64,000 nucleotides of DNA from Malacoraja senta (taxonomy: Eukaryota). A program made the translations under genes and the position numbers. Shown piece by piece: positions 60,176-63,108 of the stretch. The stretch is taken from assembly GCA_038087875.1 (NCBI GenBank), contig CM075998.1, forward strand, positions 558,001 through 622,000. The letters are read 5' to 3'. Below the pieces are notes generated by a model. That model saw nothing but the letters and a program-made list of their open reading frames with translations. It was not told the origin of the DNA and did not search any database. Position 1 is the stretch's first letter, and each line of letters begins with the position of its first letter.

Positions 60176-63108
60176 GTGAGTGGCTGCAAAATGAATACCA
60201 TTTACCTTATTTGTTTCTGGCTTAATCAATAAATAATTCTGACCACGCCTAACTGCAATGAACATAAGTTTTAGTGATGTTAAAATGTTTTTAAGTGGGT
60301 AACTGCAAATCATTTGAAGAATCGATATATTTTCAGTTAAGTGTTATAAAGCGAATTTCCACTATTTTAAAACGTTTACTTATTTGGAACATGAACTAAA
60401 TATGCACAAACTATTCGCAATAAATGAATTTCAGTGGAGATATTAATAACATTTAAAGGGCATTTGGACAGGTATATGGATAGGAAAGGTTTAGAGGAAT
60501 ATGGACTAAACGCGACCAGGTGGGACTAGTGTAGATGGAGCACCTTGGTCCGCATGGGAGAGCTGACCCGTGCTGTACGACTCTGTCACTTATTATAACG
60601 TTTCATTCATTTAATTTTTCTAAAGGAATTTAGAGTGGTGCCGGCTAAATCATTTAGCACGTCTGTAGTGGTTAAAATAGGAGATCGGGGCTGAACAGAA
60701 AAGTTTAAAATCACTGATGTGTGAGACAGCCAGCGCGGAGAAATGATGGAAAACATTATTCCTTTTACGAAATTAACTATCCCTTAGAGGTGATAACTGT
60801 ACTCTCCAAAATAAATTACATCGGAGGAAATATTCTCCAGTAAGTATAGCCTGTGATACTAAATCAGAAGATGCTGGAAATGTTAAGCAGGCCAGTTAGC
60901 ATCTGCCAAGAAAAAATGCGAGTCCGCGTTTCAGGTCGTTGACCAGGGGTAGATTCTTGAATATTTTCGTGTAATTATTTGAAGAACAGTTACTTTCAAG
61001 AATATATAAAATTATTTTGGATATGAAACCTCCAAATCGATATAAAAGTACTGATCAACGGATTATAAAATCATCGTATATCGGGATAAAACACCGTGCT
61101 GGAGGAACTCAGCAGGTCGGGCAGTACCTTGGAGGATATGGACAGGCGACCTTTCAGGCGGGACCCTTCTTCAGACTGATTAGATTATTCAGAACGTATA
61201 TTGTGATAACCTGTTTCATATTGTTAATTCTCAAATCTGCAGACGATGAGTTCCGCATATAAATGTGCCGAGAGTCTCTCGCAGCCTGAACTGAGCAGGG
61301 CAGATGATTCGGGTCATCGCTGCACGCATTCACTCCACTCTCATCAGAACTCAACAGGACATTTTTGATTAACTGGCCCAAGTGACCTTAAATCAATTCA
61401 TCTCGCTCTGTTGGTACTCAGGGGTGCGTTGAGAACAGCAGGAATGCTCACTCCCAATTAAATACATTAAATGATTGACCGAATTAAAACTGCCTTTTAA
61501 TTTTGAGTGATATATAATGCCCGCTCACTCCCTCTAACGCCACCTCTGCTCTTTTAATGAGGAATCAAATTCTCATGAACGCAACAACATTTTAGACTCT
61601 CCTTATCCTCCTCCTCACGGGAGGCACTGCACTGCACAGCACAATGCAGTGGGTGCGCGATATTGTGCTCTGGTAATCATTTCCAAGTTTGCTGAATCAT
61701 GCGGGCACATCAGGAATAATATTGTCACCTAACGCAGGGTTTTGATTTGAAAGAAGAATGGTGCATTCACCCCACCGCACCAAAAGATTTACACCAAAAG
61801 TCTGAAGAAGGGTTTCGGCCCGAAACGTTGCCTATTTCCTTCGCTCCATAGATGCTGCTGCACCCGCTGAGTTTCTCCAGCATTTTTGTGTACAAAAGAT
61901 TTACAAGATTGCGAGCCATTGCTTCCATATGACCGACGCAAACCTCTCTGCATCTGCACCCTGCCTCCTTTTTAATCCCCATAGATATTGTTTGACTTGC
62001 TGAGTGTTTTATTCATGCAAGGAATGAGGACTTCGCAGGCTGAGCCATCATTTAATGACCTGTCCCTAATCGAACTGGAGAAGGTGGTGGTGCCTTCTTG
62101 AATCTACTGCAGTCCTTGAGGTGCAAATGTTGATCCAGGATGTTGATCCAGTAACAGTGAAGGAACGACAATATATTTCGGTGCGTGGATGGGCGGGCAA
62201 CCTCCAGGCGGTGATGTTCATGTTTTTGCTGTCCTGGTCCTTCTAGCTGGTTGAGGTCATGGGTTTGAAAGGTGCTGTCTGAGTCTTGGTAAGTTGACAC
62301 GGTGCATTCTGGAGTTTTGTTTTGATTCTCTCTGACCGAGCCTTTGGTAACTTACCAAAAGAACTCCTGATTTGGTTCATTTATTTGACATCTGTGTTGC
62401 TTACACATCTTCGATAAAACACAAGTTGTTGTACAGAGTTCTAACGGACAGAGAACGGGTTAGGTGGATGACAGGGAGGTGGTGAATTCAACAAAACAAC
62501 ACAAGAGTATTTCTTAGTGGTCGTTGGTTGTTAGGAGGTTCAGACTTGCAGCTGGGTTAAGTGGCAATCAGCACTGTGTCAGATGTCAATAATATGATCA
62601 TGAACAACTAACTAGTAGCCACTAATTTTACCACTAATTTCCATCCGGCACTCAAATTCACCTGGACCATTTCAGACATCTCCCTACCGTTTCCAGATCT
62701 CACCGTCTCCATCGCAGGTAACAGACTACTGACCGACATCTACTACAAACCCACTGACTCCCATAGCTATCTTGACTACACTTCTTCCCACCCTGCTTCC
62801 GACATCAGTCTGAAGAAGGGTCTCGACCCGAAAAACATCACCCATTCCTTCTCTCCATAAATGCTGCCTCACCCGTTGAGTTACTCCAGCATTTTGTGTC
62901 TACCTTCGATTTTATCCAGCATCTACAGTTCTTTCTCACACATAACTAGTAGCATGTTTGAGTCACAAACACAATAATCAGAACTTTGATTTTATTTTCT
63001 CGGCAGGAGGGCTGTTCGGAAAATCTTCAGCTGAATGGCAGTGATAATATCCCACGCATAGAAATCAGTGACAACTGTGACCCCAACACACTCAGGACTG
63101 TGCCGGAG
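60020..63108 (+). CDS. IL23A: Interleukin-23 alpha subunit p19-like cytokine, exons 1-2; continues beyond the window
   Basis: Exon 1 (60020-60175) encodes a signal peptide plus PSWISCRILSRNL (human PAWTQCQQLSQKL). Exon 2 (63007-63108) encodes DNIPRIEISDNCDPNTLR (human [18 protein letters not shown]). Both introns are phase 0, exon sizes (156/102 nt) are close to human, and the gene is head-to-head with PAN2 as at human 12q13. Confidence 0.85.
60445..60588 (+). mobile_element. CR1 3' UTR fragment
   Basis: catttggacaggtatatggataggaaaggtttagagg...gtgctgtacgactct. Confidence 0.7.
61089..61180 (-). repeat. Penelope terminal-repeat fragment
   Basis: ...tttcaggcgggacccttcttcagactga. Confidence 0.65.
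61800..61892 (+). repeat. Penelope terminal-repeat insertion with hammerhead-like core and 13-bp target-site duplication
   Basis: CAAAAGATTTACA at 61781-61793 and 61893-61905. Confidence 0.8.
62620..62942 (+). mobile_element. Internally deleted Penelope (RT fragment fused to terminal repeat) with 11-bp target-site duplication
   Basis: TNFHPALKFTWTISDISLPF...IYYKPTDSHSYLDYTSSHPAS joined to gacatcagtctgaagaaggg; TAACTAGTAGC at 62609-62619 and 62943-62953. Confidence 0.85.
63007..63108 (+). CDS. IL23A: IL23A-like coding exon 2
   Basis: Acceptor ttttattttctcggcag, then EGCSENLQLNGSDNIPRIEISDNCDPNTLRTVPE, then gtaag. Confidence 0.85.

What the first reader, a model, noticed from the sequence alone, without database searches (positions are those of the whole stretch)
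63007..63108. The p19-like protein lacks the p40-linking cysteine and has an extra cysteine
Seen: PRIE-I-SDNCDP aligns without gaps to human [11 protein letters not shown], so the equivalent of mature Cys54 is Ile, while the Cys58 equivalent is kept. An additional Cys starts the exon (EGCSE). Known: human Cys54 forms the interchain disulfide to p40; IL-6, G-CSF and IL-12 p35 have a Cys just after helix A; IL-27 is a non-covalent heterodimer. Inference: this IL-23-like cytokine may pair non-covalently, use a relocated cysteine, choose another beta chain such as EBI3, or be secreted alone. It could represent an ancestral state between IL-6-type monomers and IL-12-type heterodimers.
Basis: partly seen in the sequence, partly recalled or inferred. 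Interest (0 to 1): 0.8.

Follow-up and report, generated by a model that had tools for sequence, protein, structure and literature searches.

The report
Skate IL-23 p19 lacks p40-linking cysteine
This is exon 2 of a skate's IL-23 p19 cytokine gene; like the p19 of all 13 shark and ray species compared, it has Ile/Val where human p19 has the cysteine that bonds to p40, and it has two extra conserved cysteines, so IL-23 is probably assembled without that covalent link in these fishes.

Summary

- **The exon:** 63007-63108 is a clean phase-0 exon (AG|…|GT). It is exon 2 of the IL23A (p19) orthologue of a skate close to Leucoraja erinacea. Exon 1 is at 60020-60175; exons 3-4 lie past the window end.
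- **Orthology:** It rests on Pfam IL23 and a profile match to human p19, and on the four-exon structure and head-to-head PAN2 synteny.
- **The cysteine column:** In the window and in all 14 elasmobranch p19 proteins found (13 species), the human Cys54 column is Ile or Val. This excludes assembly error or a private change.
- **Conserved cysteines:** The "extra" Cys (residue 55) is invariant. So is a second extra Cys at the top of helix D (residue 167, the column of human L160).
- **My reading of the extra pair:** They most likely form an intramolecular AB-loop/helix-D disulfide, p35-like, next to the IL-23R site. They are unlikely to be a relocated p40 link.
- **Partner binding:** The site-1 Arg and the site-3 Trp are invariant, so non-covalent pairing with p40 is the best reading.
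- **Not reachable with these tools:** The skate p40 cysteine, and outgroups to decide whether this state is ancestral.

The scan also noted this locus from the overlapping window (s1-182919).

The parts
63007..63108 (+). Exon 2 of the IL23A (p19) orthologue: 34 codons, phase 0. It encodes the start of the AB loop up to just before helix B.
   Evidence: Identical exon in the L. erinacea gene model. Pfam IL23 is the only family hit.
63064..63066 (+). ATC = Ile72 (counted from the Met at 60020), in the column of human mature Cys54, the p40-linking cysteine.
   Evidence: HMM alignment to human p19 PDB chains. The column is I or V in 15/15 rows.
63013..63015 (+). TGT = Cys55, the 'extra' cysteine (E-G-C), invariant in elasmobranch p19. 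It is the predicted partner of the helix-D Cys167, which is encoded in exon 4 outside the window.
   Evidence: The spacing to Cys76 (21 residues) equals human p35 C42-C63.
63076..63078 (+). TGT = Cys76, the equivalent of human Cys58. This is the conserved intrachain disulfide cysteine; its partner Cys88 (human Cys70) is in exon 3.
   Evidence: PMC6739322.
60020..60175 (+). Exon 1 coding part: 52 codons covering the signal peptide and helix A. It includes Cys34 (= human Cys14); the human Cys22 column is Thr. The donor is gtgagt.
   Evidence: There are 5 nt and 2 aa differences from L. erinacea.
60176..63006 (+). Intron 1 (phase 0), filled with high-copy repeats.
   Evidence: very high contig depth at about 60448-60584, 61681-61954 and 62640-62913.
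59903..59938 (+). Putative core promoter: GGGAAATTCC (NF-kB-type decamer, 59903-59912) and TATAAG (59933-59938). Both are identical in L. erinacea.
   Evidence: This is a motif match only; function is inferred.
12529..44174 (-). PAN2 gene, with coding exons on the minus strand and the start codon near 44174. It lies head-to-head with the p19 gene, as in human.
   Evidence: ORFs. Pfam PAN2_N (E=8e-27 and 8.5e-15) and UCH_1. The human gene arrangement is recalled from my own knowledge.

Best explanation
The stretch is exon 2 of a functional skate orthologue of IL-23 p19 (IL23A). In elasmobranchs as a group, p19 has a different cysteine plan from human p19.

Kept: the conserved intrachain pair (Cys76-Cys88, equivalent to human C58-C70) and the helix-A cysteine (Cys34, equivalent to human C14).

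Absent: the p40-linking cysteine (human C54 column, here Ile/Val) and the second free helix-A cysteine (human C22 column, here Thr).

Added: two invariant cysteines. One lies just after helix A (Cys55). The other is in the first turns of helix D (Cys167), four residues after the IL-23R hot-spot Trp.

I infer that Cys55 and Cys167 form an intramolecular disulfide stapling the AB loop to helix D, as C42-C174 does in IL-12 p35. I also infer that p19 binds its beta chain, most likely p40, only non-covalently, through the conserved arginine-in-pocket site 1. This would make elasmobranch IL-23 an IL-27-style non-covalent heterodimer.

Shown: orthology, the cysteine pattern and its conservation, and the conserved site-1 and site-3 residues. 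Inferred: the Cys55-Cys167 bond, the p40 partner and the non-covalent assembly.
For: Orthology:
- Exon-1 phmmer finds shark 'interleukin-23 subunit alpha-like'.
- 14 elasmobranch proteins carry PF16649. The L. erinacea protein scores 49.2 bits against a cut-off of 27.
- The elasmobranch profile hits human p19 chains at 2e-12 and IL-6 only at 5e-3.
- The AF2 model is a four-helix bundle whose best Foldseek matches are IL-23 p19 chains.
- The gene has 4 exons with phase-0 introns and PAN2 lies head-to-head.

Selection: exons differ from L. erinacea at 6/258 nt, against 91-96% identity in the flanks and introns.

Cysteine plan.

Site residues: R185 in LVARVF and W163 are invariant. Their equivalents are the mouse site-1 hot spots I176/A178/R179 and the site-3 W156/L160 (PMC7600943).

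p35 analogy: C42-C63 spacing of 21 equals Cys55-Cys76, and the helix D anchors (Y167/W163 to R189/R185) are both 22 apart.

Dispensability of the bond: the interchain disulfide is dispensable for IL-12 formation and activity. Human p19 C54S has only an intermediate secretion defect.
Against: - No coordinates of the AF2 model were available, so the Cys55-Cys167 distance was not measured. The model is only moderately confident (mean pLDDT 67; 53-70 around the AB loop).
- The helix-D cysteine is one turn (3 residues) away from the column of p35 C174, so positional homology with the p35 bond is not exact.
- The p35 C42-C174 pairing itself is recalled from the IL-12 crystal-structure paper, which could not be opened.
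- Skate p40, p35 and EBI3 sequences could not be obtained, so neither the partner nor the state of the p40 cysteine is known.
- No RNA run was found, so expression in this species is not shown.
- Exons 3-4 of the window's own species were not seen.
Confidence: 0.6

Rival explanations
1. A covalent link to p40 is kept through a different cysteine. Candidates are Cys34 in helix A (free in this plan), the C-terminal cysteine present in sharks, or one of Cys55/Cys167. The p40 partner could be the usual cysteine or a moved one.
For: Batoid mature p19 has an odd number of cysteines (5), so one is unpaired. The eight shark species have an extra C-terminal Cys a few residues after helix D, near the site-1 pole. 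Teleost work shows that p40 paralogues differ in which interface cysteines they carry (PMC8481787).
Against: The equivalent of Cys34 (human C14) is buried in the native human structure (PMC6739322). The C-terminal Cys is absent from all five batoids, including the window's closest relative, so it cannot be the general solution. Cys55 and Cys167 are both invariant and both lie at the helix-A-end/helix-D-start pole, beside the IL-23R Trp and away from the site-1 Arg at the other end of helix D.
Confidence: 0.15
2. Elasmobranch p19 does not depend on p40. With an extra stabilising disulfide and only one of the three free cysteines that retain human p19 in the ER, it folds and is secreted alone. 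Alternatively, it pairs with EBI3 (IL-39-like).
For: Human p19 with C14, C22 and C54 replaced is secreted without p40. Those free cysteines are the ERp44 retention signal (PMC6739322). In IL-27 alpha, the presence or absence of one disulfide decides autonomous secretion across species (PMC8178335). Elasmobranch p19 lacks two of the three free cysteines and gains a likely disulfide.
Against: The site-1 Arg motif, whose only known role is docking into the beta chain's pocket, is invariant over the shark-batoid split. The human C14,22V,C54S triple mutant was still largely retained in cells, so cysteines are not the only check. Nothing here discriminates between EBI3 and p40.
Confidence: 0.2
3. 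The Ile is an assembly or sequencing error, a private mutation, or the gene is a decaying pseudogene.
For: Only two of four exons are in the window. No RNA evidence was found.
Against: A contig from reads of the same species matches with 0 differences. Exon 2 is identical in protein in L. erinacea, with one synonymous change. I or V occupies the column in 13 species. Reading frames and splice sites are intact and the exons are better conserved than the introns.
Confidence: 0.02

Closest known systems
Human/mouse IL-23 p19 (IL23A; Pfam PF16649; PDB 3DUH, 5MXA, 6WDQ)
   Same: Same family by profile (E=2e-12) and same four-helix fold. It shares the 4-exon gene next to PAN2, the conserved C58-C70 disulfide, the helix-A Cys14, the site-3 Trp and the site-1 Arg motif (ARVF).
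   Different: There is no cysteine in the Cys54 column (Ile/Val) and none in the Cys22 column (Thr). Two extra invariant cysteines are present: one after helix A, and one at the column of human L160, an IL-23R contact residue. The AB loop is 4 residues shorter.
IL-12 p35 (IL12A; PDB 1F45 chain B)
   Same: Both have a cysteine right after helix A, exactly 21 residues before the conserved-disulfide cysteine (p35 C42/C63, skate Cys55/Cys76), and a cysteine in the first third of helix D. In both, the helix-D aromatic and the site-1 Arg are 22 residues apart.
   Different: p35 was not detected by the sequence profile. p35 carries an interchain Cys (C74) after the conserved cysteine, and the skate protein has none. 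The helix-D cysteine is one turn earlier in skate p19 than p35 C174. p35 has a third intrachain bond.
IL-27 p28 / IL-35 (non-covalent IL-12-family heterodimers) and the IL-27 alpha cysteine switch
   Same: These are alpha chains without an interchain disulfide. In IL-27 alpha, a single intrachain disulfide is known to decide whether the alpha chain can fold and leave the cell alone.
   Different: They are a different paralogue and use a different beta chain (EBI3). Whether the skate p19 disulfide has this effect is untested.
Teleost p40c (carp, grass carp)
   Same: It is a natural IL-12-family subunit that lacks the interchain cysteine.
   Different: There the loss is on the beta chain and in one of three paralogues. 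Here it is on the alpha chain, in what appears to be the only p19 gene, across a whole subclass.

Membership tests
IL-23 subunit alpha (p19, IL23A) | Sequence match to the family profile (Pfam PF16649) above the curated threshold | tested here: met
   The L. erinacea orthologue (exon 2 identical to the window) scores 49.2 bits against a cut-off of 27, covering profile positions 1-156 of 158. The window's exon 2 alone scores 15.1 bits, E=0.026, and IL23 is the only family hit.
IL-23 subunit alpha (p19, IL23A) | Closer to solved p19 than to IL-6, G-CSF or p35 | tested here: met
   In the profile search of PDB, 11 p19 sequences score E 2e-12 to 2e-10, IL-6 scores 5e-3 and p35 is not hit. The Foldseek top hit is 6wdq_B, a p19 chain.
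IL-23 subunit alpha (p19, IL23A) | Four exons / three introns and a position next to PAN2 | tested here: met
   Exons were mapped in L001, all with phase-0 introns, and the window is collinear with L001. PAN2 exons lie on the minus strand upstream. The human arrangement is recalled from my own knowledge.
IL-23 subunit alpha (p19, IL23A) | Conserved intrachain disulfide (human C58-C70) | tested here: met
   Cys76 and Cys88 are invariant and align to human C58 and C70. The bond itself is inferred.
IL-23 subunit alpha (p19, IL23A) | Site-1 arginine (beta-chain pocket) and site-3 tryptophan (IL-23R) | tested here: met
   R185 and W163 are invariant in 11 sequences and align to human R178 and W156. 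Their roles are taken from PMC7600943.
Disulfide-linked IL-12-type heterodimer (IL-12, IL-23 of mammals) | Alpha-chain cysteine that bonds p40 Cys177 (human p19 Cys54) | tested here: not met
   The column is Ile or Val in 15/15 rows. No cysteine lies within 3 residues except a private one in Heterodontus.
Disulfide-linked IL-12-type heterodimer (IL-12, IL-23 of mammals) | Partner cysteine present in the species' p40 | not testable with these tools
   No elasmobranch p40 sequence could be reached, because there was no seed sequence. The scan has no note on IL12B or EBI3 in this genome.
Non-covalent IL-12-family heterodimer (IL-27/IL-35 type) | Stable alpha-beta complex without an interchain disulfide | not testable with these tools
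   This needs co-expression and gels, or at least a complex model with the skate beta chain.

The most novel reading that the evidence does not exclude
Elasmobranch p19 preserves the cysteine plan of the p35/p19 ancestor: an AB-loop/helix-D staple and no p19-type interchain cysteine. On this reading, the covalent p19-p40 link and the free-cysteine ER retention system of mammalian IL-23 are later, bony-vertebrate inventions. As a consequence, shark and skate p19 would fold on its own and could be secreted and act without p40. It would be a natural counterpart of the engineered autonomous human IL-23 alpha.
Probability: 0.2. Interest if true: 0.7.

Novelty: new variant of a known kind. Interest (0 to 1): 0.45.

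Why it matters
IL-12-family cytokines are built from shared subunits. Work on the human proteins shows that single cysteines decide whether an alpha chain is held in the ER, needs its partner, or leaves the cell alone. A whole vertebrate subclass has p19 without the p40-linking cysteine, lacks a second of the three free cysteines, and has gained a likely extra internal disulfide. That makes it a natural experiment on these rules.

It also makes one question directly testable: when the covalent IL-23 heterodimer arose. The likely disulfide sits at the IL-23 receptor site (the human W156/L160 region), so receptor docking may differ too.

The gene itself is not new. NCBI annotates it in related species, and p19 was reported in cartilaginous fish in 2018 (PMC6238376). 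None of my full-text searches of the held papers turned up a paper describing this cysteine pattern. One 2025 survey even dated p19 to birds and mammals (PMC12162339).

Tried and rejected
- **PDB phmmer with exon 2 alone:** gave only chance ankyrin-design hits. The exon is too short, and the profile search was needed.
- **RNA evidence:** two run searches found only DNA-like contig sets of the same species.
- **Read laying:** it confirmed the exon in the same species and showed orthologous contigs in two relatives. The per-base table was truncated before exon 2, so it gave no cross-species letters there. The L. erinacea locus filled that gap.
- **Homologue searches:** both returned only elasmobranch proteins. 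No chimaera, teleost or tetrapod p19 was reachable because of the word-index limit, so the polarity of the change stays open.
- **Skate p40, p35 and EBI3:** no seed sequence was available, so no complex prediction was run.
- **Literature:** the crystal-structure papers for IL-23 and IL-12 and the IL-12 folding paper are not held. The p35 C42-C174 pairing and the p19 Arg159/p40 Asp290 contact are therefore cited from memory, or through the review PMC7600943. None of my paper searches turned up anything on elasmobranch p19 or p40 cysteines.
- **Rejected:** assembly error, private mutation, pseudogene, and the EGC cysteine as a relocated p40 link.
- **STAT2:** it was not found within 10 kb downstream in L. 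erinacea.
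Full report
**What is at the coordinates**

Window 63007-63108 on the + strand is an open 34-codon stretch, EGCSENLQLNGSDNIPRIEISDNCDPNTLRTVPE. A polypyrimidine tract and AG precede it, and GTAAGC follows it. About 2.8 kb upstream, 60020-60175 encodes MMERCFGIVALVWLLSVAGIVASETGQQPSWISCRILSRNLTSKVSNYTHKP and ends at a gtgagt donor. This is a signal peptide plus an amphipathic helix. 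Both junctions are phase 0. The rest of the window (63109-64000) has no further exon, and the window contains no N.

**Identity of the gene**

- Exon 2 alone hits one Pfam family out of 24,736: IL23 (PF16649), E=0.026, below the curated threshold.
- Exon 1, searched against 1.84 billion representative proteins, found a 207-aa protein. NCBI names it interleukin-23 subunit alpha-like of Chiloscyllium punctatum.
- Using that protein and then an alignment as queries gave 14 elasmobranch proteins from 13 species, 8 sharks and 5 batoids. All have a precomputed PF16649 hit.
- The closest is Leucoraja erinacea. It differs from the window at 2 of 86 residues, and exon 2 is identical.
- Its mature-length form scores 49.2 bits on PF16649 (cut-off 27), against 25.4 bits on the IL-6 family.
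- A profile of 11 of these proteins hits human IL-23 p19 chains in the PDB at E = 2e-12 to 2e-10, and IL-6 only at 5e-3.
- An AlphaFold2 model (mean pLDDT 67) has helices at 30-46, 86-108, 115-134 and 162-188. Its best Foldseek matches are p19 chains.

**Gene structure and neighbourhood**

The L. erinacea locus (L001) shows four exons with three phase-0 introns. It is collinear with the window at 91-96% identity. By that alignment, the window's exon 3 should begin about 310 nt past the window end.

Exons 1-2 differ from L. erinacea at only 6 of 258 nt (4 synonymous codons, 2 replacements). This is tighter than the introns.

PAN2 exons (Pfam PAN2_N, UCH_1) run on the minus strand from about 44.2 kb down to 12.5 kb. 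The two genes are therefore head-to-head, which is the human arrangement as I recall it and as scan note s1-177987 proposed.

The species is a skate near Leucoraja, but not L. erinacea itself.

**The cysteine column**

The HMMER alignment places elasmobranch 'ediprievsdncdpetlrtvpetclkkikeGl' on human '[32 protein letters not shown]'. Human mature Cys54 therefore falls on the I/V of 'IE[IV]S'. Cys58 and Cys70 fall on conserved cysteines.

Across the window and all 14 proteins, that column is Ile or Val. The only nearby cysteine is a private R-to-C change three residues earlier in Heterodontus.

A read-derived contig of the window's species covers 62914-63728 with no difference. It may be the source sample, so the cross-species data are the independent support.

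**The full cysteine plan**

This could not be seen from the window alone. Residues are numbered from the Met at 60020.

| Residue | Human equivalent | State in elasmobranchs |
|---|---|---|
| Cys34 | C14 | invariant |
| Thr (helix A) | C22 column | no cysteine |
| Ile/Val72 | C54 column | never cysteine |
| Cys76 | C58 | invariant |
| Cys88 | C70 | invariant |
| Cys167 (helix D) | L160 (precursor), four residues after the Trp equal to W156 | invariant |

The helix-D cysteine lies in an N-C-T motif in 12 of the 13 species (D-C-T in L. erinacea). The eight shark species carry one more cysteine near the C-terminus, and batoids do not.

**How it most likely works**

In human p19, C58-C70 is the only internal bond and C54 bonds p40. 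C14, C22 and C54 are free cysteines that ERp44 uses to hold unassembled p19 back. C54S reduces p40-driven secretion but does not abolish it, and the C14V/C22V/C54S protein partly escapes alone (PMC6739322).

[quoted passage not shown] The alpha-beta interface is dominated by an arginine of helix D that enters a pocket of p40. The murine p19 hot spots are I176, A178 and R179.

The corresponding L-V-A-R-V-F segment is invariant in elasmobranchs. It is the longest stretch shared with human p19. The site-3 Trp is invariant too.

I therefore read the protein as a working p19 that still docks a beta chain through site 1, without a covalent link.

**The two added cysteines**

These are best explained as a pair.

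- Cys55 lies three residues after the Pro that aligns with the end of human helix A.
- Cys167 lies in the first two turns of helix D.
- In an up-up-down-down bundle, these two points are at the same pole. This is an inference from topology and from the secondary structure.

Human IL-12 p35 has a cysteine in the same place. In chain 1f45_B, C42 and C63 are 21 residues apart, exactly like Cys55 and Cys76. Its helix D aligns without gaps: Y167 to R189 is 22 residues, and W163 to R185 is 22 residues. On that alignment, p35 C174 falls one turn after the column of Cys167. From memory of the IL-12 crystal-structure paper, p35 C42 is bonded to C174.

A p35-like AB-loop/helix-D staple is thus the most economical reading. 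It also argues against Cys55 being a relocated link to p40, whose contact region lies at the other end of helix D.

In human IL-23, the receptor's N-terminus wedges between the AB loop and helix D, and L160 packs against the receptor. A disulfide at this spot would also shape the IL-23R site.

**What remains open**

- I could not obtain p40, p35 or EBI3 of any elasmobranch, so the partner and the fate of the p40 cysteine are unknown. No complex was modelled.
- I could not obtain p19 from chimaeras or bony fishes, so ancestral and derived cannot be told apart.
- One hint on polarity: the interchain cysteines of p35 (11 residues after the conserved cysteine) and of human p19 (4 residues before it) are not in the same column. 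This leaves room for the p19 link being a later acquisition.
- No RNA run was found.

**Rivals**

- A relocated covalent link through Cys34, or through the sharks' C-terminal cysteine: about 0.15.
- p40-independent secretion or an EBI3 partner: about 0.2. The loss of two of three free cysteines and the IL-27 alpha precedent (PMC8178335) support this rival.
- Error or pseudogene: about 0.02.

**Novelty**

The gene is annotated in relatives, and p19 in cartilaginous fish was shown phylogenetically in 2018 (PMC6238376). That paper does not mention cysteines.

None of my searches of the held library turned up a paper describing the pattern. A 2025 survey missed fish p19 altogether.

This is a new variant of a known kind. 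It is of moderate interest and has clear bench tests.

The scan noted the same locus from the overlapping window (s1-182919), not on other DNA.

Noticed in passing
window 59903-59938: GGGAAATTCC (an NF-kB-type decamer) and TATAAG lie 85-115 nt upstream of the p19 start codon. Both are identical in Leucoraja erinacea. This looks like a likely inducible core promoter.
   Followed up: partly
L001 10001-10099; window 59921-59923: The NCBI models for L. erinacea and Rhinoraja start at an upstream ATG, which adds 33-41 residues before the signal peptide. In L. erinacea (L001) that ATG sits between the kB-like motif and the TATA-like motif, and in the window it is AAG. It is probably a mis-called start.
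   Followed up: yes
window 12529-44174 (-): The PAN2 gene lies here (Pfam PAN2_N and UCH exons; N-terminal exon at 43620-44174). Its start is about 16 kb from the p19 start, and the two genes are divergently oriented.
   Followed up: partly
window 2278-2817 (+): A long open exon matches the inositol monophosphatase family (Pfam PF00459, E=5.7e-13). The gene was not identified further.
   Followed up: no
window 60448-60584, 60996-61269, 61681-61954, 62503-63050: Intron 1 carries very high-copy repeats, with contig depth up to 10^7, shared at high identity by the three skate-like species laid. Reverse-transcriptase-like ORFs lie nearby (for example 57775-58251 on the minus strand and 5284-6009 on the minus strand).
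   Followed up: no
P0002-P0016 (alignment): The helix-D cysteine sits in an N-C-T glycosylation sequon in 12 of 13 species (D-C-T in L. erinacea). The eight shark species have one more cysteine near the C-terminus that the five batoids lack. Heterodontus has a private extra Cys (IPCIE).
   Followed up: partly
window 32000-36000: A G+C-rich block (0.48-0.49, against about 0.39 around it) with long overlapping ORFs on both strands lies inside a PAN2 intron. It was not examined.
   Followed up: no
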